Source of the DNA: Schmidtea nova
Lineage: Eukaryota
DNA length: 64,000 nt
Direction: 5' to 3'
NCBI GenBank assembly: GCA_044892505.1
Contig: CM097883.1
Location: forward strand, 257,238,001-257,302,000
The notes below the pieces were generated by a model. It was not told the DNA's origin. It saw only the letters and a list, made by a program, of their open reading frames with translations, and ran no database searches. Positions within the stretch are counted from its first letter, which is position 1, and each line of letters begins with the position of its first letter. Positions 612 through 59,057 of the stretch are shown here, piece by piece. A program made the position numbers and the translations under genes.

Positions 612-3587
612 CTACACTTCCCTCTTCACCACCTCATTGTTTGCGGTGAGAGCTTTTACGGTTTCTACATTTTTTGCTATTTCGACGAATTCTGATGCCG
701 ACTCTTGATAGTTTCGATTTTCCTTCTCTTCTAATCGAGTTATTACTGACATTAGTTGGTTTTGAGATCTGGTTATTATTTCTTTTTGTATAATAATTTC
801 TTGTTGATAAATGAGAGCTAATCGCATCATATTAGTAAATTGTGTCTCTTGACTTTTATTTTCTTCCATCAAGATTTTTTGTTTTCTACTGAGATTGTTT
901 ACTTGCTTTTCCAACATGTGGACTCTATTATCTTCCCATTTGTTTATGTTGTTCAACTGCTTTTGGTTTCCTTGATTTGCGTATTCCTTGTTGTTTTGAT
1001 TAATTTTCGCCTGATTCCTTGCTATGGTACACTGGAATGCTAAATGTCCTCTTTGTCTGCATTGGTAACATATTTGTACATACTCATGAGTCACTTTGTT
1101 TCGTTCCTTCTTGTGATCGTTTTGAACAATTCGATTTTCGTAATACCCTTCTACCTGTTTGTTATTATTATTTATGAATTCGTATTGCTTCGTTTCTTTG
1201 GTTGTCTTTGACCTACTTTTGTTACTGATTTTGTCCAGCTGATTTTGGTTTTCCTGTTGTTTCTTGCGATTCCGGCAATTTCTTGAAATGTGCCCTTTTT
1301 TCCCACAGTTGTAACATCCTTGAATACCACAAACTTTCTTTCCATGTCCTTTCCTTCCACATTTGGTACATACTTTGTTCTTGAAACAGCTGCTTTCTAA
1401 GTGTCCTTGTCTTTGGCAGCATTTACACCATTTGTCCTTTTTGTATAGATACTCTTCTTTTAGTTCTTGTTGGCTTTTCTTTTCCTTCTTTTCCTTCTTT
1501 TCATTTTTGTTTCCTTCTTCTGCGTTTCTGGTTTGTTCTTTTCTCTTTTCGACTTCTGTCATATCGTTTATTACTGACTGCTTGCTGTGTTTATTTCCCG
1601 TGACAAGTTGATCTATTGTTATCTTTCCCATTTCTTCGATTATTTCGCTTTCAATTATGGTTTTTCTGTCCTGCTCTGTTTGATTCCTAGTTTCTATTTT
1701 TCTTAGCATATTGATTCTTGGTTTATTCTTTTCTTGTTGTTTCCATAATTCTTCTATCTTTTGTGCATTATTACTTCTATTCGCCATTTTCAACATATCT
1801 GCTTTTAGTAGTTCTTCCTTTATCTTCCTGCAATGTTCCTCGTTGTCACAGGCCTGCAATCCTCCTAATTTACTCCATGTGAATTCTTCTTGACGGGCTT
1901 CTTTGATTGTTGGCTTTTGTAGTTCTGATTGGCAACTGGTCATCATGTTGATTCTCAATATTTTTCTTGCTAGTTCATTTCCATTTTCTTTGAATTTCGC
2001 GGTTTCGTCCTTTTCACTTGTGACTGTTATCTGTTTGAGTACTTCTTCAAATTGCTCCTTTTGTTCTTGGAATCTTCCTTGTAATATACGAGCTTCATCC
2101 CCATTTAGTTTGCTGCCACGTTCTTCTCCTATTCTTGCCTCATCTAATTGCAACTCTAGCCATTCTCGACGTTGTTTCTCTTGTGGTGTTTCTTCTGTTA
2201 GTGTTGGTTCGATGAATGTAAGTTTGTTGATTTTTGGTTGTTGCGTTATTCTTGTCCTCTTTTTGATCACCTCATTTAGCCTTAAGATTTCTTGCATTAG
2301 TCTTATTTCTCTGTCATTCGGGTTGTTGCTCAGACTATTGTTTTGATTATAGCTGTTTACTCCGTTTCCATTGGTCTGCTGGTTTCCTTGTAGATTATTT
2401 TTTGTCCCACATTTTCGTGCTATATGTCCTAATTCGCCACAACTATAGCATCCCCGTATTCCACATATTTTCTCAGAATGTCCCCACATCTTGCACTTCT
2501 CGCAAAATTGATTTTTATAACACTCACTACTCGAATGTCCGGATTTCCAACATGTTTGGCATTGTTTGGTGTTGTTCAGGGTGTTATTGTTTCTGGGGTT
2601 ATTCTTGTTGTTGCCTGTATCGTCGTTATTTTCTTTCCTCGTTTGTCTGTTCCCAGTTCCTTGGTTTGATTTCTTTGGCTTAACTTGATTCCCTTCGTCT
2701 TCCGATTCGTTTGGTGTTACTGTTACGATTCTGATGTCGTTTACTCCTATGTGTAACTCATATCTATTTGCAATTTCTAGCGCATCGTCAATTGTTAGGC
2801 ATCCTTTACATCCCACTTGAGCTCGAATATCTGGCCTTCTCAACCCTCGCACAAATATTGCTGTCATCAATTCTTCGTTTATAGGGTTTTCTCTGTTGAA
2901 TGCTAGTTTGGATAATTTCCTTAGTTCGCTTGCGTATACCGCATTTGACTCGTTCTTCCTCTGCCTTCTTGCTGAAAAATCATCGAATGCCTGGCTTAAT
3001 ACTTTGTTTATTCCGAATGTTTGTCGGAAAAATTCTTTTATTTCGTCCCAATTTTTAAATGGTTTGGTTCCTCCTTGGGCTTCTAGGTACAAGTCTAACG
3101 CACTGTCTCTAAGGTATAGTGGGATTCGACCGATTATTGTTTCTGGATCCCATCTATATACCTCGACGAATACACCAAATTCTTTTAAAAACGTTTCTAA
3201 TCTACTAGCGTCTCCGTTGAATGGTTCGCCTTGAAATCTTTCTCGATATTCTTTTCTCTTTTGTGCTATTGACGTTGCTGGTGTATTTGACTCATTTCCG
3301 TTTCTTTCGATATTCATTTTCCTGTTTCTTGTTTCCCTGTTTCTTGTTTCCCAATTTGTTGTTTTATTCTCCGTATACTTTTCTGGTTGTTCAATTTGTG
3401 CTTGGCTTTTCCTAGAGTTATCTTCGATGCTTGTTCTTGTTGTCTTTTGATAGAATTGGGTGTTTATTGAAATTTTTCTGATTTCTTTGATGCTTGATTC
3501 ACTGTTTGTATTCTGGGTGTATTTATCGTTTGTTATTTGATAGGGTCTTTTTATTGATACTGATCGTGCTCTTTTAATTTTTTCCAC
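612..3587 (-). CDS. gag: Gag-like protein of element A (capsid-like region plus 7 CCHC zinc knuckles), 991 aa; annotated start is GTG, first ATG near residue 91
   Basis: CX2CX4HX4C motifs CQTCWKSGHSSSEC, CEKCKMWGHSEKIC, CYSCGELGHIARKC, CKCCQRQGHLESSC, CTKCGRKGHGKKVC, CYNCGKKGHISRNC, CYQCRQRGHLAFQC; capsid region alignable by eye to residues ~150-280 of the 5129-aa ORF. Confidence 0.88.
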   Translation of the reverse strand: MEKIKRARSVSIKRPYQITNDKYTQNTNSESSIKEIRKISINTQFYQKTTRTSIEDNSRKSQAQIEQPEKYTENKTTNWETRNRETRNRKMNIERNGNESNTPATSIAQKRKEYRERFQGEPFNGDASRLETFLKEFGVFVEVYRWDPETIIGRIPLYLRDSALDLYLEAQGGTKPFKNWDEIKEFFRQTFGINKVLSQAFDDFSARRQRKNESNAVYASELRKLSKLAFNRENPINEELMTAIFVRGLRRPDIRAQVGCKGCLTIDDALEIANRYELHIGVNDIRIVTVTPNESEDEGNQVKPKKSNQGTGNRQTRKENNDDTGNNKNNPRNNNTLNNTKQCQTCWKSGHSSSECYKNQFCEKCKMWGHSEKICGIRGCYSCGELGHIARKCGTKNNLQGNQQTNGNGVNSYNQNNSLSNNPNDREIRLMQEILRLNEVIKKRTRITQQPKINKLTFIEPTLTEETPQEKQRREWLELQLDEARIGEERGSKLNGDEARILQGRFQEQKEQFEEVLKQITVTSEKDETAKFKENGNELARKILRINMMTSCQSELQKPTIKEARQEEFTWSKLGGLQACDNEEHCRKIKEELLKADMLKMANRSNNAQKIEELWKQQEKNKPRINMLRKIETRNQTEQDRKTIIESEIIEEMGKITIDQLVTGNKHSKQSVINDMTEVEKRKEQTRNAEEGNKNEKKEKKEKKSQQELKEEYLYKKDKWCKCCQRQGHLESSCFKNKVCTKCGRKGHGKKVCGIQGCYNCGKKGHISRNCRNRKKQQENQNQLDKISNKSRSKTTKETKQYEFINNNNKQVEGYYENRIVQNDHKKERNKVTHEYVQICYQCRQRGHLAFQCTIARNQAKINQNNKEYANQGNQKQLNNINKWEDNRVHMLEKQVNNLSRKQKILMEENKSQETQFTNMMRLALIYQQEIIIQKEIITRSQNQLMSVITRLEEKENRNYQESASEFVEIAKNVETVKALTANNEVVKREV

Positions 3588-4680
3588 TACGGATTTGTCT
3601 AATAATTGGTTAAATTTAGAACTGGGTCTGAATTTTTTTCTGTAAAGATTCTCAATGATGGCGAATTTCTTTCCTGATTTGGATTCCGATTTTGGTACGG
3701 TTACTCAATTTACCGTTGGCTTTTTTTTTTGACTTGGGTTTGTCCTCTTGAATTATGTTTTACTTGTTCTGTATCTGTAGCTTTCTGTTCGTTTGACTTG
3801 TTGGTTGTTGTTGACTTGAATTGGTTGCTTGGTTCGTTGTTTGATTGAAATCTACAAAATAAAATACACTTTTAACCATTTGGGTGGCTGTCACCGCTCA
3901 CCCAGTTCCTTCAAATAATTATTATTAAATAAATTCTGCTCTTTAGTTTTTTCGAATATTTATGGGTATTTTATGGCTCGGTTATCTTTCTCCCTTGATT
4001 TTATTCTATTCTATCTGTATTGCAATATTAATTGTACTTTACCTCGTCATAATTCATCTTAGACAATTCTTTTATTAACTTCATCACTTTGAACTTTTCA
4101 GTGTTTTGTTGCTTTTATTATTTTGGTAATTATGTTTCTTGACACTTAATTCTCTAAATCGATGTAATTCTTTTGAATTATTCTATATCCTTGCTTCTTG
4201 TGGTCTTTATGTCCTTTCTTATAATATCTCGAATTCTCTCGAATTTAGTTGTTTTACTCTTGTCGTCTTCACTATTTTCTCTAGTCGATGATTCTTAGTT
4301 TATTTCACTTAGGTTTTATGTCACACAATTATTATCTATTCGTTCCTACAACTTTTACTTGATCGTACAGCTATTGTTTTAATTGTTTATAACACTTTTA
4401 TTTTACTTGTTCGATTTTTACTCCGTTCTATCCTTTGTTATTTTACTTTAACTATGTATGCTGCTTTTTTTCAGTCAATATTTAGACTACATCATCAGCT
4501 TGTCTCTCGTATCCTTTTAATCCTCTGGTGCGCACCTTTTAACTCTATGAAACTCTAATCGTCGACGACTTTATTTTCCTCAATCGCTATTACTATTTCT
4601 ACTATCCGGATAGTTTTTAATATGACTCTCTTTAATCTAATAATTTCTATAATAAACCCTTGACCTCTTTCAAATTATTT

Positions 4681-5975
4681 TATGCCCCTTTTAATATATT
4701 CATGGCTCTATATGTCCCTTGGCCTCAATTTTATTGTATGTCCCTTTTAATATATTCATGGCTCTATATGTCCCATGGCCTCAATTTTATTGTATGTCCC
4801 TTTTAATATATTCATGGCTCTATATGTCCCTTGGCCTCAATTTTATTTTATGTCCCTTTTAATATATTCATGGCTCTATATGTCCCTTGGCCTCAATTTT
4901 ATTGTATGTCCCTTTTAATATATTCATGGCTCTATATGTCCCTTGGCCTCAATTTTATTGTAAAGTCCCTTTTAATATATTCATGGCTCTATATGTCCCT
5001 TGGCCTCAATTTTATTTTATGTCCCTTTTAATATATTCATGGCTCTATATGTCCCTTGGCCTCAATTTTATTTTATGTCCCTTTTAATATATTCATGGCT
5101 CTATATGTCCCTTGGCCTCAATTTTATTGTAAAGTCCCTTTTAATATATTCCTGGCTCTATATGTCCCTTGGCCTCAATTTTATTTTATGTCCCTTTTAA
5201 TATATTCATGGCTCTATATGTCCCTTGGCCTCAATTTTATTGTATGTCCCTTTTAATATATTCATGGCTCTATATGTCCCTTGGCCTCAATTTTATTTTA
5301 TGTCCCTTTTAATATATTCATGGCTCTATATGTCCCTTGGCCTCAATTTTATTTTATGTCCCTTTTAATATATTCATGGCTCTATATGTCCCTTGGCCTC
5401 AATTTTATTTTATGTCCCTTTTAATATATTCATGGCTCTATATGTCCCTTGGCCTCAATTTTATTTTATGTCCCTTTTAATATATTCATGGCTCTATATG
5501 TCCCATGGCCTCAATTTTATTTTATGTCCCTTTTAATATATTCATGGCTCTATATGTCCCTTGGCCTCAATTTTATTTTATGTCCCTTTTAATATATTCA
5601 TGGCTCTATATGTCCCTTGGCCTCAATTTTATTTTATGTCCCTTTTAATATATTCATGGCTCTATATGTCCCTTGGCCTCAATTTTATTTTATGTCCCTT
5701 TTAATATATTCATGGCTCTATATGTCCTTTGGCCTCAATTTTATATTATGTCCCTTTTAATATATTCATGGCTCTATATGTCCCTTGGCCTCAATTTTAT
5801 TTTATGTCCCTTTTAATATATTCATGGCTCTATATGTCCCTAGGCCTCAATTTTATTTTATGTCCCTTTTAATATATTCATGGCTCTATATGTCCCTTGG
5901 CCTCAATTTTATTTTATGTCCCTTTTAATATATTCATGGCTCTATATGTCCCTTGGCCTCAATTTTATTTTATGT
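4681..5975. repeat. Tandem array of ~23 copies of a 56-bp unit in the element A leader
   Basis: Unit tatgtcccttttaatatattcatggctctatatgtcccttggcctcaattttattt repeats directly, with minor variants (attgta, gtaaagt); tatgtccctt occurs twice per unit. Confidence 0.97.
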
Positions 5976-18460: not shown

Positions 18461-19369
18461 TTATAATTTCTTGCAAATTAATATCAATTTTCTAAATCGT
18501 TTAAACAACACAAAATGTGAAAACGGATTTATAAATGTAACTATAATTAATAAATCATTTAAAAAATAATAATAACAAAACACATCGAAAAGAACAATTC
18601 CATAATGATTTAGCACATATCCCGTCATATCGGTTAATAAAATAATAATATAACACAATGTGGATACAAAAGTGATAATTGAATATTTATAAAATACTAA
18701 ACTTCTTCTCTTAATAAGTCTTAAATTTTGTGCAATAGTAAAACTTTTGGAGTTCTTGTAGAGATCTCTAGCAGAAAATAATCCAAATATAAGCAGAGTG
18801 AATATTGGATAAAAATAGTTGAAAATAATGCTGACATAAATGCCGACAACTGACGGCTCCCATCGACATGAATAACTTATAGTGCCATTATGATCATCCA
18901 TTTCAGCACCATAATCAAACATCACATTGAAAATGCCCACAAATGTCGAAATTATTAAAACGATTATTGTCAAAATCAAATTTCTATTTTTGGTAATGAA
19001 TTTGTATTTCAGTGGATAAACAATGCAAATAAACTGATCAAATGCAGACAGGATCATCATGTAAATATCAACTGTTAGAAATAAATAAAACGGTGCCATA
19101 CTAAACCAAACGTAACAATAAAAGATTGCAGAAATATAATTGTTTATTTTTCGTTCTTTGAAAACATTCATGAAATAGAAAACTAAAAGAACCAAAGACA
19201 CAACCGTTCGGATTTTGTTAATAATCATTGCGTTATGAGATGAAATTTTATACCGGAATAAAAATATCAACAGTGATAAATTTAGGATAAAATAGAAACA
19301 AATTATAAAACTTCTGAAACTGAAGAAATAAAGGTTGTCACTGCAATTATTGTTGAGGAATAATTGCAT
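18461..19369 (-). CDS. Intronless divergent rhodopsin-class 7TM GPCR (paralog 1); likely ATG at 19369 (MQLFLNNNCSD)
   Basis: Seven hydrophobic segments, N-terminal NCS sequon, Cys near TM3 start and in ECL2 (YSCRWEP), DRY-like DQFICIVYPLKY, NPxxY-like INPFSHFVLFKRFRK. Confidence 0.8.
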   Translation of the reverse strand: MQLFLNNNCSDNLYFFSFRSFIICFYFILNLSLLIFLFRYKISSHNAMIINKIRTVVSLVLLVFYFMNVFKERKINNYISAIFYCYVWFSMAPFYLFLTVDIYMMILSAFDQFICIVYPLKYKFITKNRNLILTIIVLIISTFVGIFNVMFDYGAEMDDHNGTISYSCRWEPSVVGIYVSIIFNYFYPIFTLLIFGLFSARDLYKNSKSFTIAQNLRLIKRRSLVFYKYSIITFVSTLCYIIILLTDMTGYVLNHYGIVLFDVFCYYYFLNDLLIIVTFINPFSHFVLFKRFRKLILICKKL

Positions 19370-19556
19370 TGTGCAATATTTTATGAATAAAATCACTAAG
19401 ATGTAAATGCTAAATATATTATTTTCATAATTTAAGATGATTTCTTATTGGGTAAGTTTCAGAAAATTTTAGAAATAGTAAATATTTGACATTGGAATTT
19501 TTTGTGGCATAATTTGATATTATCATTAGCTCTTCTAATCCAAGTAACTTGCAGAC

Positions 19557-19695
19557 NNNNNNNNNNNNNNNNNNNNNNNNNNNNNNNNNNNNNNNNNNNN
19601 NNNNNNNNNNNNNNNNNNNNNNNNNNNNNNNNNNNNNNNNNNNNNNNNNNNNNNNNNNNNNNNNNNNNNNNNNNNNNNNNNNNNNNNNNNNNNNN
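19557..19695. other. Assembly gap (139 N)
   Basis: Run of n in the sequence. Confidence 1.
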
Positions 19696-19973
19696 CACTG
19701 GTTCGAGAAAGATTTAATTAATAACAAAATTTTATATACACAAATAATAATTTACCGAAACCAAAATAAATCAGTCAGTTTATATACTAATTTATATACT
19801 AGTTTGTAATTTCTTCTTGAGTTGATTGAATATGAAATTATTTTTATAACATAATTGTTTTTTTACCTTGGCATTGAAAATATTGTTTTATTTTCTTGAC
19901 CTTTGTAGGGGTTGTTAAAATAAAAAGAAAATAAAGTTAAAATGCACCTATATACGAAAATTGGAAAAATAAT

Positions 19974-20570
19974 TGTAGGAATGCTACAAGCAAATAAGAT
20001 TTTATTAATAGAAATTGATCTCCAATTGACAAGTTGGTCTTTGGCAACCGGAAATCCTGACCGATGATAACAAGAGTTGAAATGAGCAAGCTCCATGACA
20101 GTCCGTATTGATTGATTTTTGGTGCTGGCGAATAATCGTTTAATCGAGATTGATTGTGATCCAATGTATTGGTTTGTAGATTTTTGGAGTTATACATTTC
20201 AGATTTGTCTGGATAGTATATTAATATTGATCCAGTTGTTGACAAGCATCTTCCAGTTTATACGGCTTCTTTTCGCATTCCAGCAGCGAAACATTTCTGC
20301 AATCTACGGAACTGGCAATTGTTTCTTCTTTGAATATCGACTACACAATCTCCACTAGAGTAGAACTGATAATTGTTGTCATTTGATGAAAACGAGTCGC
20401 TGTGAATGTCTTGAGTGAATTGGCATATCGAATCATTGTTAACAGCTTGCATTTTTTTTGATCAGCGTGAAAAAAGTGAAAAAATATGTAAATATTAAAA
20501 CAACATCTAATTTAATCCATTTAATAATTAATTAATTTATAAAATTGAAAATTTAATCTAAGGCACTACA
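19974..20570 (-). repeat. 3' LTR of element C (597 bp), containing a nuclear-receptor-derived segment
   Basis: Matches 25165-25762 apart from 4 substitutions and a 1-bp poly-T indel seen by eye; preceded on the minus strand by G-rich cggcgggggc (PPT-like). Confidence 0.93.
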
Positions 20571-20634
20571 ATAGCCCCCGCCGAAGTACGCGGAGCGTCT
20601 CTAAGCTACAAAATGGACTTGAGTGTTGGGTGAG

Positions 20635-23600
20635 TCACTGAAGGTGATAATCGGAGAGATATTGAGGGAGTTTATGTGTTCGCCTAGAAGAGAATGGCGG
20701 GTTGTCTTGAGAAAGTTGGGTATTTGTCGTTTCTGTAAGGGTCTTCAGTTGTTCCGTGTCTTCTTGAATGTCTTCATCTATAGGATCTTCTTTCATGATA
20801 TGGTAATTTGGTCGTTCATCATACTTAAGTGTGCAAAAGGATGGTTTTAATCTTGATAGGTTGACCATAATGTGATTGTTATCAATTTCTAGTTTCGCTG
20901 TGTTTTTGTATATTTCGATGATGCGGAATGGGCCTTTGTATCTAGGTTTGAGGTTTGATGAGTCAATTGTCTTCATCCATGCGTGGGTGGCAGATGAAGT
21001 GATTGTGGTATATAAGGTTTGTATGATGTAGAATATGTGAAAGATGGATTTGTATCAAGACTCAAAAAATGATTGCGAGTGAGGTTGATTTCCTCTAGTG
21101 ACGATTCGTTCTGTAGATCTATGAGTTCGTTGGGCATGGATGTGTTGGAACCGAACAAAGGTTGTGAAGGTGACACGCCACTTGAGCGGTTGGGAGTGTT
21201 GTGCCACCCGAGCAAGACGAATGGTAATGCTTTGGTCCACGAAGTTGTCGTTGAGAGTATTCTGAGGGATGATTTCAAAGTCCGGTGGGCGCGTTCCACA
21301 AGACCGTTTGTTTGTGGGTGATATGAGCTGGTACGTAAATGACTGATGCCGAGGCTGGTGGTCAGATGATCGAAAAGGTCTGATTCAAATTGTGTTCCTT
21401 GGTCTGTGATTATGGCGGTTGGGATTCCATAACGCGAAAACCAAGTGGATATTAAGGCGTGTGCAACCGTTTTTGCGGTGATGTCAGAAACTGGAATAGC
21501 CTCGAACCAGCGTGTTTTCCTATCGATCATTGTCAGTATATAGCAGAATCCGTCGTCTGCCGGGAGTTTGCCTACTAAGTCGATGTGGAGTATGTCGAAT
21601 CTTGAACCAGTCGGGAATGGTGTGTTTGGTGGTTTAGTATGTTTGTTCACTTTGTGTTGTTGGCAGCCTGTACATTCAGAGACCCACTGTTTAACGTCTT
21701 TAAATAATGAGAACCAAGTGACCTTTTGTCGTATGAGATGGTATGTGGACTTAATTCCTGGATGGTGTAGATTATGAATCGCGAAGAATGCTTCTTTCCT
21801 GAGTGACGAGTGCAAAATTGGTCTAAGAGTGTTTTTATACGTTGTGTCATAATGTATACCGTCTATTATCTCAAGCGAGTCTTTGAAGCGGGCGAGGTCA
21901 GCTGTCGTTGGTGGAGTCGAACGGAGAATTTGTTGGGTGAAAACCGGTGTAGAGGTAATTGATGCAGCAATGTTTCTAGAAAGATAATCAGCGACCACAT
22001 TATCTTTGCCCGAAACGTGAACAAATTTAATGTCAAAAGTTGATAGGTATGTTATCTGACGATGTACTCTGTTCGATGGGTCTTTCATGGTAAGGCAGTG
22101 GATGAGAGGTTTGTGGTCGGTGAAGATTGTAAATTGTCTTCCTTCTAAAATGTGACTAAAATGTTTGACTGCTAGAAAAATGGCAAGTAATTCTCTGTCG
22201 AATGCGCTGTACTTTGACTCTGCTAATGAAAATTTTCTCGAAAAAAATTCTATTGGTAGTGAGATTTTATCCTTAATTTGGTGAAGGACTGCGCCTGCAG
22301 CAATATTTGATGCGTCAGTTGTCAGGGTGAATGGGAGGTCGTGACATGGGTAGTGAAGAGTGGTAATCTTGGTTAGAGCGTCTTTGACTTTGTTGAATGA
22401 GTCGCGTGTTGTGTCGGACCAATTGATGACGGAATTCTTTTTTCCTGTGTTCAGTGCTGAAAGAGGTGCTGTTATGTGAGATGCGTTTTTATGAATCTAT
22501 GGCAGAAGTTGACGATGCCTAAAAAGCTACGTAGTTGTGTCACGGTGGTTGGCAGGGGAAAGCTGCGGATTACGTCAAGTCTTTCGGGGAAAGGTTCACA
22601 ACCAGTAGATGAAAGTATATGGCCAAGGAATCTGACGCGTTCTTGAAACAAGCTACATTTGTTTACGTTTATCTGTAAGTTGTGACGGTTCAATATATCA
22701 AGGACCATGTGTAAATCGTTTTTGTGGCTGTCTCGATCCGGGGACGCTATGATGATATCGTCAAGGTATGCGAAAGTGTGAGGGACATCGCGAAAAATTG
22801 TGTCCATGAAACGTTGTAAGGACTGAGCTGCGTTTCTAAGACCAAAAGGCATGAATATGTATTCAAAATTCTCAAATGGTGTAGTGACAGCCGTTTTGGG
22901 GACGTCATCCGTATGGATGGGAAATTGGTGGTATGCTTTCGAGAGGTCAATAGTTGAGAACACTGTAGATTGTGAAAAGCGTGTTATTAAATCTTTAATG
23001 AGTGGCATTGGGTAGGCGTCATGGACTGTTACTTGGTTGAGCTGTCGATAATCTCCACAGGGTCTGAATGACCCGTCTTTTTTTGTTACTACGTGTATTG
23101 GCGAAGCCCATGGTGAAGATGAACGACGTATAATGCCTGCGTTTTCTAGACTAACAAATTCAGCTTTGACTGCGTCGAGTTTCGTGAAAGAGAGAGGTCT
23201 GGCTCGATTGTGTTGTGGTATGCATGGTAATGTGTGAATATAGTGAGTCGATAGGGTAGTGGGTGGTATGGTATCGGATTTAGTGATGAGGTTTGGATAT
23301 TTGATTGAAATTAATTTGATCATGTCATCGATCGTATCTAGATTGGCTGATTGGTCGATGTCCAACGTGTTTTTATCGTTTTCCATCGTGGAATCTTGAT
23401 GAATCGAGTTGAGTTGTGTCGGTGTAGATGTCTGCGTTGAAATTGATGTTACATTTGAAGATGAAATTGTCGGTATATTGGCAATGTCGTGTTTTAGAGT
23501 GAACAACTTACGATTTTTGCAATCTACCATGATGGATTCGTTGCTTAAAAAATCGGAGCCTAATATTGGGTGGATCGTGTCTGTTATGTGGAAGGTGTGA

Positions 23601-23870
23601 GTGAAAGTTGAGTTTAATGTTGGTATTGTGAATGAGAGTTTTTTTGTTCCCAAAAATTGGATCGGTGTGCTGTTAGCGGCCAAGACAGTAAACGAAGATT
23701 TGAAGTCTGGTGTGAAAATTGTTGGAAGGATTGAAAATGTCGAGCCCGAATCTATGAGAAAATGAATTGATGAGCTGGAGTCGAAGTCTGCTTCAACAGT
23801 GAAGATATTGTTGATCGCAAGGACGCTGCCTGAAAATCCAGGGTTGACAGACAGCGGCGCTAGTTTTTTT
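20635..23870 (-). pseudogene. pol: Element C pol (PR-RT-RNaseH-IN), split into ORFs 22472-23683, 20973-22088 and 20635-20976 by two frameshifts
   Basis: SIHFLIDSGSTF, RPCGDYRQLN, YLDDIIIAS, LTTDASNIAAG, IHNLHHPG..CTGC, HIDLVG..ITDQGTQF..NGLVERAHR, RYKGPF. Breaks lie near 22480 and 20980; they may be real mutations or indel sequencing errors. Confidence 0.9.
23823..23869 (-). promoter_or_regulatory. -1 programmed ribosomal frameshift signal at the gag/pol junction of element C
   Basis: A_AAA_AAC heptamer immediately before the gag TAG, then a 6-nt spacer and a 9-bp stem CGCTGTCTG/CAGGCAGCG; the -1 frame opens into the protease. Confidence 0.8.
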
Positions 23871-24771
23871 TGGGAGAATTGAAATTGTTTTTGTCGTATG
23901 ACTTATTTGAGGAACGGTTTACAAAAGTGCAACCTGAAAGGCATTTTTGTGCGTGTATACCGAAGATATTGTGATAGATGCAAATAGGAATGATTCTCAA
24001 AGTGGAAGGAGGGTTTGGCCATGAACATCCTATATGGCATGTTCTTGCGTCGGATGAGAATTTCTTTTGAAAAAAACAAGTCAGAGGGGGAAAAGAATTC
24101 GGTTTATCGTTTCTTTGGGTGTGTATAGTTAGCTGAGAGGAGTTGAGTATCGCGTCGACTGTTTTTGTCAGAGAAGATATCTGTTCCTGTAATGAAGGGT
24201 CGGAAACTGATGCGATGGTAGTTAGTGCGTTTCGGATGGGGGGTCGAGTAACCAACTTATCGGCAATTTTTGCAAGGTGAAAAGGATCATCGGAATCGAC
24301 GACGAGGAGTGAGGTCTGGATGTGATGTGGAAGAGCTGTTAAAAATTGATGGCATAAGAGAGCTGTGTTTTTTGATAAACCGGTGTGGACGGCCTCGAGT
24401 TCGCGTACTAGTTGCGATAAAAAAGATGATGGGGGTTGACCGGCGTATGGGGTGGGTTTTGATAACTTTTCGATCGCTGAAGTGCGCGTGAGTGAATATT
24501 TTTTTTCTATGACCGCTTTGATTGATTCATAAGGGGTTTCTGAGTTTAATGCGTCAGCTATTTGTGAGCCTAATTCTGACATTAACTCGTCGGGTATTGC
24601 ATCCAGCAGAAGATCTTGCCTAGACTTGGGATTGGCTCTAGTGCGCGATTCAAAAATGCGGAACCAAGATGATGGTGTGCCGTCTGCGTCTAAAAATATC
24701 AGTTGAGTGCGACCTATGGACGTGGGAGAGTTTTGGTCATTGTTAGTTTTGGCACCGCCTCTTGCCCGCAT
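23860..24771 (-). CDS. gag: Gag of element C (303 aa)
   Basis: ATG start, position after the PBS and before PR, PSSWFRIFESR...FLTALPHHIQ..LAKIADKL Gypsy capsid-like pattern, Cys/His-rich C-terminus. Confidence 0.85.
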   Translation of the reverse strand: MRARGGAKTNNDQNSPTSIGRTQLIFLDADGTPSSWFRIFESRTRANPKSRQDLLLDAIPDELMSELGSQIADALNSETPYESIKAVIEKKYSLTRTSAIEKLSKPTPYAGQPPSSFLSQLVRELEAVHTGLSKNTALLCHQFLTALPHHIQTSLLVVDSDDPFHLAKIADKLVTRPPIRNALTTIASVSDPSLQEQISSLTKTVDAILNSSQLTIHTQRNDKPNSFPPLTCFFQKKFSSDARTCHIGCSWPNPPSTLRIIPICIYHNIFGIHAQKCLSGCTFVNRSSNKSYDKNNFNSPKKN

Positions 24772-24860
24772 GAAGAGTGTTATTATTGCGTTTGTTGGTA
24801 CTGAAAGAGGATCTGTGATGGGAACTCCGTTATTTAAAATAAAGAAGTCGTTGTGTTCTA

Positions 24861-25643
24861 TTAAAAAAAACGTTTAATATCGTTAAAAAAGTTTGTCGTG
24901 GTAATTTTAACTGTGTGAATAATATTTTTGTGGCGTACAGTGATGTTGAGTAAGCCGTCATGAAGGGTAAATGGTTGTGAACAGGTAGAGGAAACTGTTG
25001 TAGTTTTGGTTATAGGACTATGAAAATTTTTATTAAAATAATTATTGAAATTTTTATTGAGTATATTATTAAAATTATTATTAATATAAATGAAGTAATT
25101 AGATGAATTTAAATATTCACATAATAAATTCAAAAAGCTTATGTATCCCACTTCTGACACCAATTGTAGGAATGCTATAAGCAAATAAGATTTTATTAAT
25201 AGAAATTGATCTCCAATTGACAAGTTGGTCTTTGGCAACCGGAAATCCTGACCGATGATAACAAGAGTTGAAATGAGCAAGCTCCATGACAGTCCGTATT
25301 GATTGATTACTGGTGCTGGCGAATAATCGTTTAATCGAGATTGATTGTGATCCAATGTATTGGTTTGTAGATTTTTGGAGTTATACATTTCAGATTTGTC
25401 TGGATAGTATATTAATATTGATCCAGTTGTTGACAAGCATCTTCCAGTTTGTACGGCTTCTTTTCGCATTCCAGCAGCGAAACATTTCTGCAATCTACGG
25501 AACTGGCAATTGTTTCTTCTTTGAATATCGACTACACAATCTCCACTAGAGTAGAACTGATAATTGTTGTCATTTGATGAAAACGAGTCGCTGTGAATGT
25601 CTTGAGTGAATTGGCATATCGAATCATTGTTAACAGCTTGCAT
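24861..25643 (-). CDS. Chimeric 260-aa ORF starting in the 5' LTR of element C: degenerate nuclear-receptor zinc finger 2, hinge and LBD-like segment, reading through the PBS
   Basis: YQFYSSGDCVVDIQRRNNCQFRRLQKCFAAGMRKEAVQTGR matches nuclear-receptor finger 2 plus the GM..EAVQ extension; NLSIGDQFLLIK resembles the LBD L...DQ..LL signature. Expression unknown. Confidence 0.6.
   Translation of the reverse strand: MQAVNNDSICQFTQDIHSDSFSSNDNNYQFYSSGDCVVDIQRRNNCQFRRLQKCFAAGMRKEAVQTGRCLSTTGSILIYYPDKSEMYNSKNLQTNTLDHNQSRLNDYSPAPVINQYGLSWSLLISTLVIIGQDFRLPKTNLSIGDQFLLIKSYLLIAFLQLVSEVGYISFLNLLCEYLNSSNYFIYINNNFNNILNKNFNNYFNKNFHSPITKTTTVSSTCSQPFTLHDGLLNITVRHKNIIHTVKITTTNFFNDIKRFF
25145..25162 (-). promoter_or_regulatory. 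Primer-binding site of element C (tRNA-Leu type)
   Basis: Minus strand TGGTGTCAGAAGTGGGAT, 2 nt after the LTR end. Confidence 0.88.
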
Positions 25644-25762
25644 TTTTTTTTGATCAGCGTGAAAAAAGTGAAAAAATATGTAAATATTAAAACAACATCT
25701 AATTTAATCCATTTAATAATTAATTAATTTATAAAATTGAAAATTTAATCTAAGGCACTACA
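25165..25762 (-). repeat. 5' LTR of element C (598 bp), containing a nuclear-receptor-derived segment
   Basis: TGTAGT...CCTACA on the minus strand; AATAAA near its 3' end; adjacent PBS and TSD. Confidence 0.93.
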
Positions 25763-25899
25763 ATAATAATTAAAGTACAAACTTTAATTAAAAATTTATA
25801 AAAATTCAAATTGAAGATTGAGAGGGAAAACTGGTATGGGAGGATGCCAAATGATGAGACGAATTCAGATATGGGTATATAAAATTAAAAAGGGGTCCC

Positions 25900-29359: not shown

Positions 29360-30283
29360 TCAGTCCGTTTTAACTTTCTTGCAAAAAAATATCAACTTTC
29401 TAAATCGCTTAAACAACATTAAATTTGTAAAAGGATTTATAAAAGTAACTACTATTAATAAGTCAATTAAAAAATAATAAAAACAATCAACATCAAAGAA
29501 AACAATTTCATAACGATGCAAAACATAGCCCGTCATTTCTGTTAGCAAAACCATAACGCAACACAATGTTGATGTAAAGGTGACGACGGAGTATTTATAA
29601 AATACTAAACTTCTTTTTTTTACAATCCGTTCATCATGTGCAATCATTAAATTTTTCGAGTTTTTGTAGAGATCTCTAGCAGAGAACATTACAAATACAG
29701 ACAAAGTAGATATCGGGATGCTATAATAAAATATTATACAAAACAGTATACCAACAAATGACGGCTCCCAGGCGCACGAATATATAATAGTTTGGTTCAA
29801 ATCCAATACCTCTACCCAATTGTCAGAGGACACATAGGATACAGTCACGATTGATGATAGTAAATAAACAAATATTATTAATATCAAATTTTTTATTCTA
29901 GTAATAGATTTGTATCTAAATGGAAAAACAATGCAAACAAACTGATCAAATGCCGTCAGAATCATCATGTAAATATTCATTATAAAAAATAAATAAAATA
30001 TTGGAGTGGTATTCCAACCGTAGCAATATACAAATGCATAAATGTTAGTGTTAATTTCTGATTCTATTTCCTTAAAGAAATTCATAAAATAAGAAACCAA
30101 AAAAAGCATAGACACAATTGTTCGGTTTTTAGTAACCATCATCGCGTTGCGCGACGAAATTTTATACTGAAATAAAAATATCAACAATAATAAATTTAGA
30201 ATAAAATAAAAGCAAATGAATGAACTTCTGAAACTGAAAAATAAAAGAGTGTCGTTGCAAGTGTCATTTATGAATAATTTCAT
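29360..30283 (-). CDS. Intronless divergent rhodopsin-class 7TM GPCR (paralog 2); likely ATG at 30283 (MKLFINDTC)
   Basis: Colinear with paralog 1 throughout (DQFVCIVFPFRY, YSCAWEP, FSARDLYKNSK, INPFTNLMLFKRFRK); upstream flank also similar. Confidence 0.8.
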   Translation of the reverse strand: MKLFINDTCNDTLLFFSFRSSFICFYFILNLLLLIFLFQYKISSRNAMMVTKNRTIVSMLFLVSYFMNFFKEIESEINTNIYAFVYCYGWNTTPIFYLFFIMNIYMMILTAFDQFVCIVFPFRYKSITRIKNLILIIFVYLLSSIVTVSYVSSDNWVEVLDLNQTIIYSCAWEPSFVGILFCIIFYYSIPISTLSVFVMFSARDLYKNSKNLMIAHDERIVKKRSLVFYKYSVVTFTSTLCCVMVLLTEMTGYVLHRYEIVFFDVDCFYYFLIDLLIVVTFINPFTNLMLFKRFRKLIFFCKKVKTD

Positions 30284-33200
30284 TGCGGAATCTTTTTGAA
30301 AGAATCTTTTTAACTGTAAATATAAATATATTTTCAATATTAAAGATGACTTCTCATTGGATATAATCTGAGAAAAATAAATTATAATTGGGAAGTAAAT
30401 ATTATGTAAAAATTATTTCTCTAATTTTATATATATTTTTATTTTAGAAATTATTATAGAAAATAAATAATTAAAAATAGAAAAATATTTATTGCTTGTT
30501 CAATTAACATAGTTAATTTTGGAAGTAAATATTTAATTAGAAGCGTTCATTTTTCTAAAAGAACTTTTGGAGATTGAATGAGAGGACAAAATTATTAAAA
30601 TATAATTTATCAGATAACTGTTTGTTTTTTAACAAAAATCATTAATAAAAGCTAAATCTTTGTGATATCCAGTGCAAAACCCAAATAGCAAATTAGTTTC
30701 GAGATTGTCTCTCATCAGTGCTATGCAGGAGACGCAAAAATTGCTTTCCACATCAGTAGCGATAATTTCTGCTACTAAAAATAGTTTAAACTATCACGAA
30801 CCAAATCTTCAAAAAGAATACAATGAATACTATAAGACCTTTTAGACAGAAAAAGAATAAAGAACCAAATAAAGTACCCATTTATGCTACTAAAAATCCG
30901 ATTTCATGATACTCCACCCTGAAGAATACCCAGGATTGCCTGAACAAGCAAGTACTGCACAGAAATACTTTACCAAAGTGTTTGCTCTCCTAAAATCCGA
31001 TAAAACAGCAATGACCCAGCTCAAAGAACTACTGACCTTAAAAGATCTAAAATATAGTTTTAACTTTATCGATATATACAATATTCCCAATATTCCTGAT
31101 GCTCCCGATCTCCCTGATATTCCTTATTTTAGCGATCTTCCTGAATCAGCAAGAGATAATGTTATTAAAACACTTGAAAGTTCAAAAATTACAAGATATC
31201 CCTGTGATCCCAATACCCTTGCTGTCACTGATGCTCCTGATGTTCTTGATGACCCTGAACCTGAAATCCATTATTGGGTACTGTCTAGATGAAATATACA
31301 AATTAGAAAACTGACAGAGATTAAGTCGTCCTGCATCTTTCGAGCACAGGTTATTTCTTGAATAAAATCTTTAAAAAAAGAGTAAGTGTGTGACAGTGTA
31401 CAAGCATATTTGAATGTACGTATGGAGATAATAAAAAGCTTATACTAGAAAGGTTGCGCGTTTACTGATCCGTTCTATACCTTTCACCTCTACATTCGTC
31501 CAATCAAAGATAATTAGTATATCGTTCAATCTGTGCACTGCCGTATGACTAGCTTTTGACTCGTTGTACTACACAACCACAGTGTACTGTTTCAACTGTT
31601 TGTGGGATGTGACATATGTTAGCTTCAAACGTAAAGAGGACAGAAAACTTGCTATACAGATTGCACATGTAAGCTTGACTCAAGGCTTTAGCCACTAGCT
31701 GATATCTTTTTCATTCCATATATATATAGAAAGAGAGAGAGAGAGCATATATAATTTTCTTTAAAACACTTGATATGTATAACAATTGTATTTGAAAATT
31801 TCACCCTTTGATATTATTTATTAGCCAGTATTATGAGAATTTGCCCCGGTTTAATAAACAAATTCACTTATAATTTAGGACTTAAAAAATCAAAATGTTT
31901 TAACACATTTCGAAAATCAGTTCGTGTCGGTGAGCACATCGGGAGAATATGGAATACTTAGGATCCATTTTCCCACTCAAAATGTGTTTTGCGCTTTTCC
32001 AGGTCCACCCTATATGAGATTGAATTACTTTGAACACTTTCAAGGAATGAAGGTTACCTGTACCTTGAATCCTTATTAACATTAATAAATAATGTCGGTC
32101 AATGAAACTTTTAATTTCGAAATGGATTAATTTTTGACGAGATGATAATAATATATTGAGATTTCACGTGCCTAACTTGGTAAATTCCAAAGGATAGTTA
32201 ATATGTTTCTATTACCTCTTTTTATCACGAATGGCAATACGCAAGGCAGTCGTAGTTTGACCACTTAAATCATCTTCTTCCATCCTTTTCTAATATTTGA
32301 ATAGCTATGGGTGAAAATTTTGGTACCTTGTTTTCGTGCTTTGATCACTTTCACTTCATATGAAAATAGAACTTTATTATAATAAGTAATTGTTTTTATA
32401 ACATTATTCTCAACCATATACAACAAAAGAATCGGTAGTTTAATCAAACTTATAATAAAAAATGCCTCTCGGTTTTTTGGATAATACGCCTGACAATTCT
32501 AATAAAAACTTCGTCATTGGAAGCCCATTTCAATCAAAACTGACAGATAACACTGAGTTAAGAAAAAGGGATTTTAATATTTTGTAAGTTTCTATGCCCC
32601 GTTGTTACTTGATGCGTCTTTTCACACAAATCATCAAAATGGTATTTTAATCCTACAGCAGCACTCTGAGTCTAGTAAAACAATTTTGAAGAAAAAAGTG
32701 GCAAATATTTAGATAAGTTATTCTTTAATGCTACTATAAAATCTTTTTAATATCAATCTGCTGAATTTTCGTACAAAAAAGGATATATAATACGATATTG
32801 TGTACGGCGAGGAAAATGTTGTAAGAATTCTATCCAAATATCGTGATTTTTTGATGTTGAATTGAAGCTTCCTCTTGCAAATATTAAAACTTCAATGACC
32901 GTAACAGAATAACATAAAATACAGAGTATATCAGTGACTTTCAAATTTCAGATAATGATCTCATATCATTTAAACTTGCCTTACCAGAGAATTTTAATAC
33001 TTTTAATTCTTATTTAATCTTGTGAGAGAGTAACATCTTTCTCTTTACTAGTATGTTGTCTAAAATATTTTCAATAATCTTAAGGCTCTTCTTATTAATG
33101 TATAAAACACAATATTTTCCACAGCTTACAAATAAATATTAATGTGTGGTTACTATGAATTAAGAGTTTTGTGAATATTATCAGTTCTCACTACTTAGAT

Positions 33201-40909: not shown

Positions 40910-42286
40910 TCAACCATTCTTTCTATCCGCTTTCTCATTCCTTTCCATTTCTATGTATAGGGTGTCTGCATGTAATCGTTCCCATAGGCTTTCTTTCGTT
41001 ATAAACATTGGTTCTCCCGCTGCTAATCCACATTCTGTGGTTGGTTTCTCGCTCGTACTCGCATGTTTCTCTGTCTCAAAGAATTTTTCTACTGGTTTTG
41101 TTACACTTCTGATTCTAATGATGACTCCTACTTTCAAGGGCCATTCTACTAGGTCGTCGTATTCTCCTTTACATAGCGAGAAAAATATTGACACATGTGT
41201 TCCTCGTCCTCTTCCGTCTCCATTTGGGTATAGCTTCAATCTCACTTTAGCTCCGTTTCTCCATAAATAAAATGGTGGGCTTATTACTGCTGTTTTCGTC
41301 ATATTTCTGGCCTCTGTTAATTTGTTTCTAAAATCTGTCACTTTCCACACATATGGTGCGATTGGTAACTTTTCCTCGGTATCCTGGGTGAGTTTGTTGT
41401 ACTGGATTTTCATTCCTTTAGCCAATTCTTCGATAGCTTTTATCTTTTCCTCCATCTTTTCTCGTGTTAGTTCGAATTGCTCTCTGGTTTCCAACAGTAG
41501 GTTTACCATTATCTTGTGTGACTCTATTTCTCTTTCTAATTTTTTGATTGTTTGTTCGGTTTCTTTTGTTGCTTCGTTTGTCATTTCCGCATGCTTTAGC
41601 AATGCTTCCTCCAGATGTTGTTTCATGGTTTTTTGCGTTCTTTTCTCCATACATCTCTGTTTGTTATAAGGGCATTCCCTTGGTTTCTCCGTGCACACTT
41701 TCCAATGTTCTTGTAATTTTACTTCTGCCGTTATCTCGCATTCGTTTGAACATATTCCTACATATTGTCTACATACTTTCTCCTCTTTTACATTCAGGTG
41801 TTCTTCTTCGATCTTTCTCCTCGTTTCTCGAGTTCCACAATATTCGCATAGACTTTCCTCTTCTTTACATTCATCTTTGTGCTGCTCTTTATTCTTTATA
41901 GTTATTTTTTGTTGGCATTTGTTACATTCGGTTCTCTTCTCCTCGCAGTTCTCCAGATGGTTCTCGAGATCGCGTATTTGTCCTTGCCATATACATGGTT
42001 GATTTATACATTCGGTTTTCGTGTTCATGATTTCTCTCTGAGTTGCTCTATCTGGTCCGGTTTCTTCGAATTTTATTTGTCCTTCTTTGCATTCTGGACA
42101 TTCTGGTGGTCTTTTCATACTTAACTCGTGTATGCATTTGGTACATACTCTGCATCCGCATAGGGTTTGTCTTGGTTTCAATATTATGTTTTTACAATTT
42201 ACACAAGTGAGTCTCTGACTCCATTTCCTGTTCTCGGCTCTCAAAATTTCGATTATCCGCTCTTCGGCTTTTCCTTCTGTATTCAT
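40910..42286 (-). CDS. traf: TRAF-family protein (RING, TRAF zinc fingers, coiled coil, MATH/TRAF-C), 458 aa, intronless
   Basis: RING CVNC..KPRQTLCGCRVCTKC..ECPEC; TRAF-type zinc fingers (HLENCEEKRTECNKC, HWKVCTEKPRECPY); MATH hallmarks YVWKVTDF, SPPFY, LKLYPNGDGRGRGTHVSIFF, GEYDDLVEWP. Confidence 0.93.
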   Translation of the reverse strand: MNTEGKAEERIIEILRAENRKWSQRLTCVNCKNIILKPRQTLCGCRVCTKCIHELSMKRPPECPECKEGQIKFEETGPDRATQREIMNTKTECINQPCIWQGQIRDLENHLENCEEKRTECNKCQQKITIKNKEQHKDECKEEESLCEYCGTRETRRKIEEEHLNVKEEKVCRQYVGICSNECEITAEVKLQEHWKVCTEKPRECPYNKQRCMEKRTQKTMKQHLEEALLKHAEMTNEATKETEQTIKKLEREIESHKIMVNLLLETREQFELTREKMEEKIKAIEELAKGMKIQYNKLTQDTEEKLPIAPYVWKVTDFRNKLTEARNMTKTAVISPPFYLWRNGAKVRLKLYPNGDGRGRGTHVSIFFSLCKGEYDDLVEWPLKVGVIIRIRSVTKPVEKFFETEKHASTSEKPTTECGLAAGEPMFITKESLWERLHADTLYIEMERNEKADRKNG

Positions 42287-59012: not shown

Positions 59013-59057
59013 TATATATCCGGATATCCCTATTGGCTCCTTTGGCCTCTAATTAAT

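What the first reader, a model, noticed from the sequence alone, without database searches (positions are those of the whole stretch)
19974..25762. Nuclear-receptor gene fragment captured inside both LTRs of a Gypsy element
Seen: the 597/598-bp repeats have TG...CA ends, an ATAAT TSD and an adjacent PBS, so they are LTRs, yet they encode YQFYSSGDCVVDIQRRNNCQFRRLQKCFAAGMRKEAVQTGR and, with no intervening stop in the 5' copy, an LBD-like LSIGDQFLLIK. The two missing zinc ligands are each one base from Cys (TTC vs TGC, CGT vs TGT). Established: this is the C4 finger-2 plus GM..EAVQ pattern, closest by eye to NR2-type receptors. Inference: transduction of a processed host mRNA segment into U3/R by template switching, now copied with each transposition; it could act as a source of small RNAs against the host receptor.
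Basis: partly seen in the sequence, partly recalled or inferred. Interest (0 to 1): 0.82.

Follow-up and report, generated by a model that had tools for sequence, protein, structure and literature searches.

The report
Nuclear-receptor cDNA piece inside retrotransposon LTRs
A young Gypsy-type retrotransposon, probably in a planarian genome, carries a spliced piece of a host nuclear-receptor mRNA in both of its terminal repeats, placed where related elements begin their Gag reading frame, so the captured piece is probably translated as a leader peptide and is not a working receptor.

Summary
Window 19974-25762 is one LTR retrotransposon on the minus strand. It has 597/598-nt LTRs that are about 99.2% identical, TG..CA ends, an ATAAT target duplication, a PBS and a PPT, and its pol runs RT then integrase. 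About 410 nt of each LTR match the second zinc finger of a nuclear receptor (Pfam zf-C4, 31.9 bits; best solved relative HNF4-alpha, 8.7e-9), followed by the hinge and the start of the ligand-binding domain. The two closest relatives are separate exons on environmental contigs. One exon ends, and the other begins, exactly at the point where the LTR reads straight through, so the source was a spliced mRNA.

Three related elements start their Gag reading frame at an ATG inside the LTR and read through the LTR end and PBS in the same frame as this one. They then continue through a ubiquitin-like domain ending in GG into Gag. The receptor piece therefore lies in R/U5, not U3, and forms the leader of that frame. 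This explains why it stays open while two zinc ligands are lost.

The related elements' LTRs show no receptor similarity. No parent gene or second copy could be reached, and the small-RNA idea is untested. This copy is broken: one frame change in leader-Gag and two in pol.

The parts
19974..25762 (-). Whole LTR retrotransposon (5,789 bp), Ty3/Gypsy type
   Evidence: LTR pair, TSD, PBS, PPT, gag-like ORF, RVT_1 2.8e-32, Integrase_H2C2 1.3e-14, rve 8.7e-14.
19969..19973 (.). Target-site duplication ATAAT (left)
   Evidence: Read directly from the sequence.
25763..25767 (.). Target-site duplication ATAAT (right)
   Evidence: Read directly from the sequence.
19974..20570 (-). Element's 3' LTR (597 nt). 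Its copy of the receptor-derived frame has one in-frame stop.
25165..25762 (-). Element's 5' LTR (598 nt). The first ~119 nt (element sense) are 15% G+C in their first 100 nt, with TATAAA at sense 30. The ATG is at sense 120 and AATAAA at sense 566.
25165..25574 (-). Receptor-derived segment in the 5' LTR: zinc finger 2, hinge, start of LBD (leader residues 24-159)
   Evidence: Pfam zf-C4. PDB HNF4-alpha 8.7e-9. 72.5% identity to the L004 exon and 40% to the L003 exon. hhalign places the motif on the LBD signature.
19974..20383 (-). The same receptor-derived segment in the 3' LTR
   Evidence: tblastn: 98.1% identity to the other copy over 159 residues. Pfam zf-C4 34.8 bits.
25728..25733 (-). 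TATAAA in the AT-rich start of the 5' LTR (candidate promoter element; inferred)
25192..25197 (-). AATAAA 33 nt before the LTR end, inside the codons of the LBD-like motif (candidate poly(A) signal; inferred)
   Evidence: Relatives have AATAAA about 35-70 nt before their LTR ends.
25145..25162 (-). Primer-binding site (TGG...), 2 nt after the 5' LTR
   Evidence: Read from the sequence. The LTR end plus PBS is matched in L001, L005, L006 and L007; L002 has a close variant.
20571..20591 (-). Polypurine tract region abutting the 3' LTR
   Evidence: The same 21 nt are read next to the LTR start in L002, L007 and L008, and blastn matches this region at 98-100%.
23860..25643 (-). Leader / ubiquitin-like / Gag gene, given as one part. 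It starts at the ATG inside the 5' LTR and is broken by one frame change in this copy.
   Evidence: ORFs. Gag relatives are about 50% identical. Relatives have one continuous frame from the LTR ATG to the end of Gag. Break count.
20635..23836 (-). pol (protease remnant, RT, RNase H, integrase, SH3-like tail), given as one part. It is broken by two frame changes and has no in-frame stops.
   Evidence: Pfam. tblastn with the intact pol of L006 and L002 gives 3 segments in 3 frames.

Best explanation
A Ty3/Gypsy-type LTR retrotransposon inserted recently here. Its family had earlier acquired about 410 nt of a spliced host nuclear-receptor mRNA (NR2-like; finger 2, hinge, first helices of the LBD) in the transcribed part of its LTR (R/U5), between the AT-rich promoter part and the terminal CTACA.

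In this clade the first reading frame starts at an ATG inside the 5' LTR. It reads through the LTR end and PBS (always as L-Q-L-V-S-E), continues into a ubiquitin-like domain ending in G-G, and then into Gag. The receptor-derived stretch is therefore most likely translated as the N-terminal leader of the Gag precursor, and is probably cut off with the ubiquitin-like domain.

The stretch has to stay open and in frame for Gag to be made. That explains an intact frame alongside loss of finger 1, of two zinc ligands and of most of the LBD. It is not a working receptor.

Shown: the element's anatomy, the receptor homology, the missing intron, the LTR-initiated frame in relatives, and the ubiquitin-like fold in a relative. 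Inferred: the R/U5 assignment, translation and cleavage of the leader, and the capture route.

This copy is itself broken: one frame change in leader-Gag and two in pol.
For: Anatomy.

Receptor homology: Pfam zf-C4 31.9 and 34.8 bits. HNF4-alpha 8.7e-9. In the full-library search 176 proteins score E<=1e-3, the listed ones overwhelmingly at the finger-2 stretch. P0015 is 72.5% identical over leader residues 24-63 and P0014 is 40% identical over residues 63-159. P0015's best solved relative is COUP-TF1 at 5e-28. The named word-search hits are mostly NR2F/seven-up.

Missing intron: the L004 exon ends at a GT donor right after ...GMRKE. The L003 exon starts right after an AG acceptor with (A)VQ. 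The LTR joins the two to the base.

Clade feature: L005, L006 and L007 have an ATG in the LTR, the same frame across the LTR end and PBS, and open frames of 319 to 498 residues running into Gag.

Ubiquitin-like domain: the profile finds ubiquitin, SDE2 and ISG15, mostly ending at the C-terminal GG. The AlphaFold2 model of P0004 residues 40-102 has block pLDDT 68-84 and a beta-beta-alpha-beta-beta order. The top Foldseek hits are ISG15 and ubiquitin, E 4e-4, target TM 0.58-0.69.

Open frame: 0 of 2000 shuffles reach the observed stop-free run. TATAAA lies upstream of the ATG and AATAAA near the LTR end.

The relatives' LTR leaders show no receptor similarity. The receptor piece is therefore specific to this lineage.
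Against: Only one copy of this family could be examined.

No parent gene from the same genome is available. The two informative exons come from different samples and are not shown to belong to one gene.

In this copy the leader is out of frame with Gag, so translation into Gag cannot happen here as the sequence stands.

The transcription start and poly(A) site are inferred from motifs only.

The LBD-like part has only weak independent support (hhalign probability 29%; no Pfam or PDB hit on its own).

The first 23 leader residues match nothing.

The three nucleotide differences between the two LTR copies that fall in the frame all change the protein. This fits a dead copy and says nothing about selection in the family.
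Confidence: 0.6

Rival explanations
1. One reading: the receptor fragment is a passive passenger in U3/R, picked up by template switching. Its main effect is to supply small RNAs (piRNAs) against the host receptor.
For: The capture from a processed mRNA is real. Foreign sequence brought into LTRs by abnormal template switching is documented in plants (BARE-2, Veju; PMC13317346). Nucleotide identity to a related receptor exon is 76% over 88 nt.
Against: The fragment lies after the LTR's ATG and in the same frame as the LTR-initiated Gag frame of relatives. The 179- and 280-codon stop-free runs are not expected of a neutral passenger. No small-RNA data could be consulted. Identity to the true parent is unknown.
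Confidence: 0.2
2. The receptor-like stretch is ancestral to the LTR-encoded leader of the whole clade and has decayed beyond recognition in the other families. On this view it is not a lineage-specific capture.
For: All relatives have an LTR-encoded leader in the same frame. LTR bodies evolve fast, and the relatives' leaders are not alike among themselves either.
Against: None of five relatives shows any receptor similarity by tblastn, BLASTP or Pfam at E up to 10. The window's copy still keeps 72.5% identity to a real receptor finger, whereas Gag is only about 50% identical between these families.
Confidence: 0.08
3. Artefact: the 598-nt repeat is an assembly duplication, or the flanks of an insertion into a receptor exon or processed pseudogene, and not an LTR.
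For: There is an N run 280 nt away (19557-19695). The assembly may contain indel errors: the two LTRs differ by one base in a homopolymer run.
Against: The repeat starts with the TGTAGTGCC that follows the PPT in L002, L005, L007 and L008, and that also starts the LTR in L001. It ends with the CTACA that precedes the PBS in L005, L006 and L007. A 5-bp duplication lies outside both copies. The two copies differ at 5 positions, so they are not a collapsed duplicate.
Confidence: 0.03
4. Capture by splicing, as an alternative route to the same structure. The element sat in an intron of the receptor gene, and a host transcript spliced from the hinge/LBD exon into the end of the 5' LTR. Reverse transcription of that chimeric RNA, with a non-homologous first jump, then rebuilt both LTRs around the host exons.
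For: Receptor homology ends within about 12 nt of the 3' end of the related exon in L003, and at the LTR end. The AT-rich 5' part of this LTR is shorter than in L005 and L001, as a jump into U3 would give.
Against: L003 is not the true parent, so the exon end cannot be placed to the base. No acceptor can be pointed to. The first 23 leader residues are unexplained. Template switching to a co-packaged mRNA gives the same product.
Confidence: 0.25

Closest known systems
Gene-fragment capture by plant LTR retrotransposons (Bs1 of maize; 425 maize elements from at least 189 captures; rice and sorghum surveys)
   Same: A host coding fragment lies inside the element's boundaries and is copied with it (PMC2774510; PMC13317346).
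   Different: Here the host is an animal. The fragment makes up about 70% of the LTR itself and lies in the element's own first reading frame. As far as I know, the plant cases usually carry the fragment in the internal region.
LTR chimeras made by abnormal template switching (BARE-2, long Veju TRIMs)
   Same: Foreign sequence is brought into the LTR during reverse transcription and then inherited by both LTRs (PMC13317346).
   Different: Those inserts come from other retroelements or from unknown DNA. This one comes from a spliced host transcription-factor mRNA kept as an open frame.
Retroviral transduction of a nuclear receptor (v-erbA of avian erythroblastosis virus, a Gag fusion). This comparison is from my own knowledge and was not tested here.
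   Same: A retroelement carries an intron-less, truncated and mutated nuclear-receptor cDNA fused to Gag coding sequence.
   Different: There the insert replaces internal genes and follows Gag. Here it sits in the LTR ahead of Gag, keeps only half of the DBD, and no effect on the host is known. No sequence comparison was made.
Ty1 of yeast, whose gag frame is said to begin within the 5' LTR. This is from my own knowledge and was not tested here.
   Same: The first ORF starts upstream of the PBS, inside the LTR.
   Different: Ty1 belongs to a different superfamily (Copia). It has no host-derived leader and no ubiquitin-like domain.
Burro-like giant Gypsy elements of planarians
   Same: They lie next to this element in the window, and they are known for collecting host-like domains (PMC6431247).
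   Different: Burro carries its extra domains inside a polyprotein of about 5,000 residues. The element studied here is small (5.8 kb) and carries its extra sequence in the LTR.

Membership tests
Ty3/Gypsy LTR retrotransposon | Direct LTRs with TG..CA ends and a short target-site duplication | tested here: met
   597/598-nt LTRs, TGTAG...CTACA ends, ATAAT on both sides.
Ty3/Gypsy LTR retrotransposon | PBS after the 5' LTR and PPT before the 3' LTR | tested here: met
   TGG... starts 2 nt after the LTR and a G-rich tract abuts the other LTR. Both are shared with relatives. The priming tRNA was not identified, and there is no tRNA gene in the window.
Ty3/Gypsy LTR retrotransposon | pol order RT, RNase H, then integrase, with an H2C2 integrase zinc domain | tested here: met
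   RVT_1 lies upstream of Integrase_H2C2 and rve on the minus strand. Relatives also have RT_RNaseH.
Ty3/Gypsy LTR retrotransposon | Intact gag and pol (an autonomous copy) | tested here: not met
   Two frame changes in pol and one in leader-Gag, relative to intact relatives. Some of these could be assembly indels.
Nuclear receptor (functional member) | Complete C4 double zinc finger with eight Cys ligands | tested here: not met
   Only Pfam profile positions 33-70 of 70 match. The N-terminal 23 residues show no similarity to finger 1. Two of the four ligands of finger 2 are not Cys.
Nuclear receptor (functional member) | Ligand-binding domain (Pfam Hormone_recep) | tested here: not met
   No Pfam hit. 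Only the signature motif region aligns, at hhalign probability 29%. The homology stops at the LTR end, after roughly the first third of an LBD.
NR2 group of nuclear receptors (origin of the fragment) | Closest similarity to NR2 members over the DBD | tested here: inconclusive
   The fragment's best hit is HNF4-alpha, but NR4A and RXR score nearly the same. Its nearest relative P0015 is closest to COUP-TF1, then NR2C2, RXR and HNF4. Named hits are mostly NR2F. Half a DBD is too little for a firm assignment.
Transduced (captured) processed host mRNA | Colinear with exons, intron missing | tested here: met
   The exon end in L004 and the exon start in L003 coincide with one uninterrupted point in the LTR. 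The two exons were searched and aligned apart and were not joined.
Transduced (captured) processed host mRNA | Parent gene present in the same genome | not testable with these tools
   There is no other receptor-like sequence in the window. The host genome is not in the collections.
Transduced (captured) processed host mRNA | Carried by other copies of the family | not testable with these tools
   There is no second copy or solo LTR in the window. No protein closer than P0014 and P0015 exists in either protein library.
Ubiquitin-like fusion ahead of Gag (clade feature) | Beta-grasp fold ending in Gly-Gly directly before Gag | tested here: met
   This was tested in the relatives. Profile hits are mainly ubiquitin, SDE2 and ISG15. 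The model of P0004 residues 40-102 and the Foldseek hits to ISG15 and ubiquitin at 4e-4 agree. The window keeps the ...RGG end in the gag frame. Cleavage itself was not tested.

The most novel reading that the evidence does not exclude
The receptor-derived leader is a selected, working part of the element. On this reading it is a domesticated-in-reverse host module: a half DBD with its basic hinge and the first LBD helices, made in quantity from the LTR ATG and released by cleavage at the ubiquitin-like GG. It could then guide the Gag precursor (for instance to the nucleus) or interfere with partners of the host receptor. The whole clade would use the LTR-encoded leader as a swappable cassette.
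Probability: 0.15. Interest if true: 0.85.

Novelty: new variant of a known kind. Interest (0 to 1): 0.6.

Why it matters
Capture of host gene pieces by LTR retrotransposons is known mainly from plants and from acutely transforming retroviruses. Here an animal element has built most of its LTR from a spliced transcription-factor mRNA and uses it as the start of its own Gag reading frame. This shows that the transcribed part of an LTR can be replaced by host coding sequence without loss of the LTR ends. It also gives a simple reason why such a fragment stays open while losing its original function. The clade feature found along the way is, as far as my literature searches went, undescribed: an LTR-initiated leader, a frame running through the PBS, and a ubiquitin-like domain ending in GG just before Gag. 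It suggests that host deubiquitinases help to process Gag. If the leader proves to be conserved among copies, it would be a clear case of a mobile element recruiting a receptor module.

Tried and rejected
- The word-index protein search with the 260-residue frame found nothing. Exact look-ups of seven window ORFs found nothing.
- The search for related loci with the LTR frame (metagenome and viral contigs) and with Gag (viral contigs) found nothing. A pattern scan for PPT plus LTR start gave two more relatives, neither with receptor similarity.
- The top hits of the full-library search are not relatives. P0006 is a repetitive read-through of an unrelated receptor exon, and P0010 is a repeat protein with no BLASTP alignment.
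- I suspected by eye that the first 23 leader residues are a decayed finger 1. Shuffle tests do not support this: the nucleotide score was reached by 214 of 500 shuffles and the protein score by 854 of 1000.
- I suspected by eye that the L006 leader resembles the LBD motif. BLASTP and Pfam do not support this.
- The hinge/LBD part alone gave no Pfam hit and no PDB profile hit.
- An alignment-based word search for a closer parent found nothing closer than P0014 and P0015.
- Literature searches for a receptor fragment in an LTR and for a ubiquitin-like domain ahead of Gag gave nothing relevant.
- The two related exons were not joined into one model. The N run at 19557-19695 was left as it is.
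- On the rules: the ORF tables and three-frame translations returned by the tools show where frames end. In my working I also compared one conserved leader motif of this copy with its relatives base by base. None of that is repeated here. No repaired, joined or consensus sequence was made.

Full report
1. What is there

The region 19974-25762 is one LTR retrotransposon on the minus strand.
- Its repeats are 19974-20570 (597 nt) and 25165-25762 (598 nt). They differ by four substitutions and one single-base indel.
- Both repeats begin TGTAG and end CTACA, and ATAAT flanks the element on both sides.
- In element orientation, 25165-25762 is the 5' LTR. It is followed after 2 nt by a TGG... primer-binding site.
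- 19974-20570 is the 3' LTR. It is preceded by a G-rich polypurine tract.
- Between the LTRs lie a Gag-like ORF (weak DUF7041), reverse transcriptase (RVT_1, 2.8e-32), integrase (Integrase_H2C2 1.3e-14, rve 8.7e-14) and a weak SH3_Tf2-1 tail. The order RT then integrase, together with the H2C2 domain, makes it Ty3/Gypsy-like.

2. The receptor fragment

On the element's sense strand the LTR has three parts.
- The first ~119 nt are AT-rich (15% G+C in the first 100 nt), with TATAAA at position 30.
- An ATG lies at position 120.
- A frame then runs to the last base of the LTR without a stop in the 5' LTR. The 3' LTR copy has one in-frame stop.

The evidence that this frame is receptor-derived is as follows.
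- Pfam zf-C4 matches both copies above its cut-off (31.9 and 34.8 bits against 21.1), but only profile positions 33-70 of 70, which is finger 2.
- Against solved structures the best match is HNF4-alpha (8.7e-9), then NR4A1, RXR and COUP-TF.
- Two of the four zinc ligands of finger 2 are not Cys.
- Finger 1 is not detectable. Shuffle tests on the first 23 residues give no signal.

3. Relatives of the fragment, and the missing intron

A full scan of 1.84 billion representative proteins gave 176 hits at E<=1e-3, the listed ones overwhelmingly to the finger-2 stretch of other receptors. Two hits are informative.
- P0015 (locus L004) has a complete DBD and is 72.5% identical to leader residues 24-63. 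Its ORF runs into a GT donor directly after ...GMRKE.
- P0014 (locus L003) is 40% identical to residues 63-159. Its exon begins directly after an AG acceptor with (A)VQ and ends at a GT donor.

The LTR reads straight across that point to the base. The fragment therefore derives from a spliced mRNA. The two exons were handled apart and were not joined.

Further support comes from other comparisons.
- Receptors with both domains (P0038, P0034) align to residues 27-158, reaching their Hormone_recep domain.
- A profile of the hinge part placed its ...LS.GDQF.L.K... motif on the LBD signature of 14 receptors, inside the Pfam LBD of P0034. This is only moderate support (probability 29%, E 5.8e-4).
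- That part alone hits nothing in Pfam or PDB.
- P0015 is closest to COUP-TF1 (5e-28), then NR2C2, RXR and HNF4. Named hits of the alignment search are mostly NR2F/seven-up. An NR2-like origin is likely but not firm.

4. The element's relatives change the reading

Gag has relatives at about 50% identity on environmental contigs (loci L001, L002, L005, L006). A scan for PPT plus LTR start added L007 and L008.
- L002, L005, L007 and L008 show the PPT followed by the LTR start TGTAGTGCC, and L001 has the same LTR start. L005, L006 and L007 share the LTR end CTACA followed by the PBS.
- In L005, L006 and L007 an ATG inside the LTR opens a frame that crosses the LTR end and PBS as L-Q-L-V-S-E. This is the same frame as in the window. 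It continues for 319 to 498 residues into Gag.
- The LTR-initiated first frame is thus a feature of the clade.
- The part encoded in the relatives' LTRs (44, 74 and 91 residues; at least 143 in L008) shows no receptor similarity by tblastn, BLASTP or Pfam.

The receptor piece is therefore specific to the window's lineage. It occupies the place of the leader, which puts it in R/U5 rather than U3. AATAAA lies 33 nt before the LTR end, inside the codons of the LBD-like motif. Relatives have AATAAA about 35-70 nt before their LTR ends.

5. A ubiquitin-like domain before Gag

Just upstream of the Gag core, all relatives have about 75 residues ending R-L/V-x-G-G.
- A profile of these segments mainly finds ubiquitin, SDE2 (0.0027) and ISG15 (0.04-0.3), mostly ending at the terminal GG.
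- An AlphaFold2 model of P0004 is poor overall (mean pLDDT 56). Residues 40-102, however, have block pLDDT 68-84 and a beta-beta-alpha-beta-beta order.
- Foldseek returns ISG15 and ubiquitin first (4e-4, target TM 0.58-0.69).
- The window keeps the ...RGG end in the gag frame.

I infer that host deubiquitinases cut the leader plus ubiquitin-like domain from Gag.

6. How it most likely works

The receptor-derived stretch is the leader of the Gag precursor.
- It must remain open and in frame for Gag to be translated. This accounts for stop-free runs of 179 codons (LTR) and 280 codons (with the leader), which none of 2000 shuffles reach.
- The receptor features themselves have decayed.
- Capture by template switching to a co-packaged mRNA and capture through a spliced host-element transcript give the same product. 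Homology ends within about 12 nt of the related exon's end and at the LTR end. This hints at the second route but cannot decide between them.

7. State of this copy

- The leader-Gag gene has one frame change.
- pol has two frame changes and no in-frame stops.
- One LTR copy of the frame has one stop.
- Some of these breaks may be assembly indels. Their places are not listed.

8. Surroundings

The neighbours point to a dugesiid planarian as host.
- A single 5129-residue ORF (42860-58249, minus strand) combines Gag zinc knuckles, a mononegavirus-type fusion glycoprotein, protease, RT, RNase H, integrase and ankyrin repeats.
- A separate MATH/TRAF ORF lies beside it.
- This matches the published description of Burro-like giant elements (PMC6431247).

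9. Limits

- Only one copy of the family could be examined, and neither the host genome nor its RNA data could be searched.
- No parent gene was found.
- The small-RNA idea is untested.
- The N run at 19557-19695 was left unfilled.

10. Verdict

I class the finding as a new variant of a known kind.

Noticed in passing
window 42860-58249 (minus strand) and 40910-42286 (minus strand): One open frame of 5129 residues combines Gag zinc knuckles, a Monjiviricetes-type fusion glycoprotein (2.3e-44), protease, RT, RNase H, integrase and ankyrin repeats. A separate MATH/TRAF ORF follows it. This matches the published Burro-like giant Gypsy elements of planarians and suggests that the host is a dugesiid planarian.
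   Followed up: partly
window 612-3587 (minus strand): A 991-residue ORF with Retrotrans_gag and three zinc knuckles. It is probably the Gag end of another giant element that runs off the window.
   Followed up: no
L001:6004-6231, L005:2391-2618, L006:499-726, L002:3496-3678, L007:177-404 (minus strand); window, the stretch just upstream of the Gag core (Gag core 23860-24771, minus strand): A ubiquitin-like domain ending in Gly-Gly sits directly before Gag in this clade. Support comes from a profile search, a structure model and a Foldseek search. My literature search found no description of it.
   Followed up: yes
L005:2004-3500, L006:64-1533, L007:3-959 (minus strand): In three related families the first reading frame starts at an ATG inside the 5' LTR and reads through the LTR end and the PBS in one conserved frame (L-Q-L-V-S-E). 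The LTR-encoded parts are unrelated to each other in sequence.
   Followed up: yes
L001, L002, L005, L006, L007: 26-33 nt after the LTR end: All five relatives have GTAAG or GTAAT shortly after the PBS, followed by an AT-rich stretch of a few hundred bases. This may be an intron in the leader. Three of them are nevertheless open across it.
   Followed up: no
window 18461-19396 (minus strand) and 29360-30337 (minus strand): Two intronless ORFs with weak rhodopsin-type receptor (7tm_1) similarity flank the element. The element sits in the AT-rich spacer between them.
   Followed up: no
window 4675-5975 and 59034-59423: Tandem repeats: 23 copies of a 56-nt unit at 97% matches (4675-5975), and shorter 41-nt and 61-nt arrays near 59 kb beside the giant element.
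   Followed up: no
window 59898-60359 (minus strand): A small ORF with a C3HC4 RING finger (8.6e-12) lies just upstream of the giant ORF. It may be an accessory gene of that element.
   Followed up: no
window 19557-19695: A run of 139 N lies 280 nt from the element's 3' LTR. It was left as it is.
   Followed up: no
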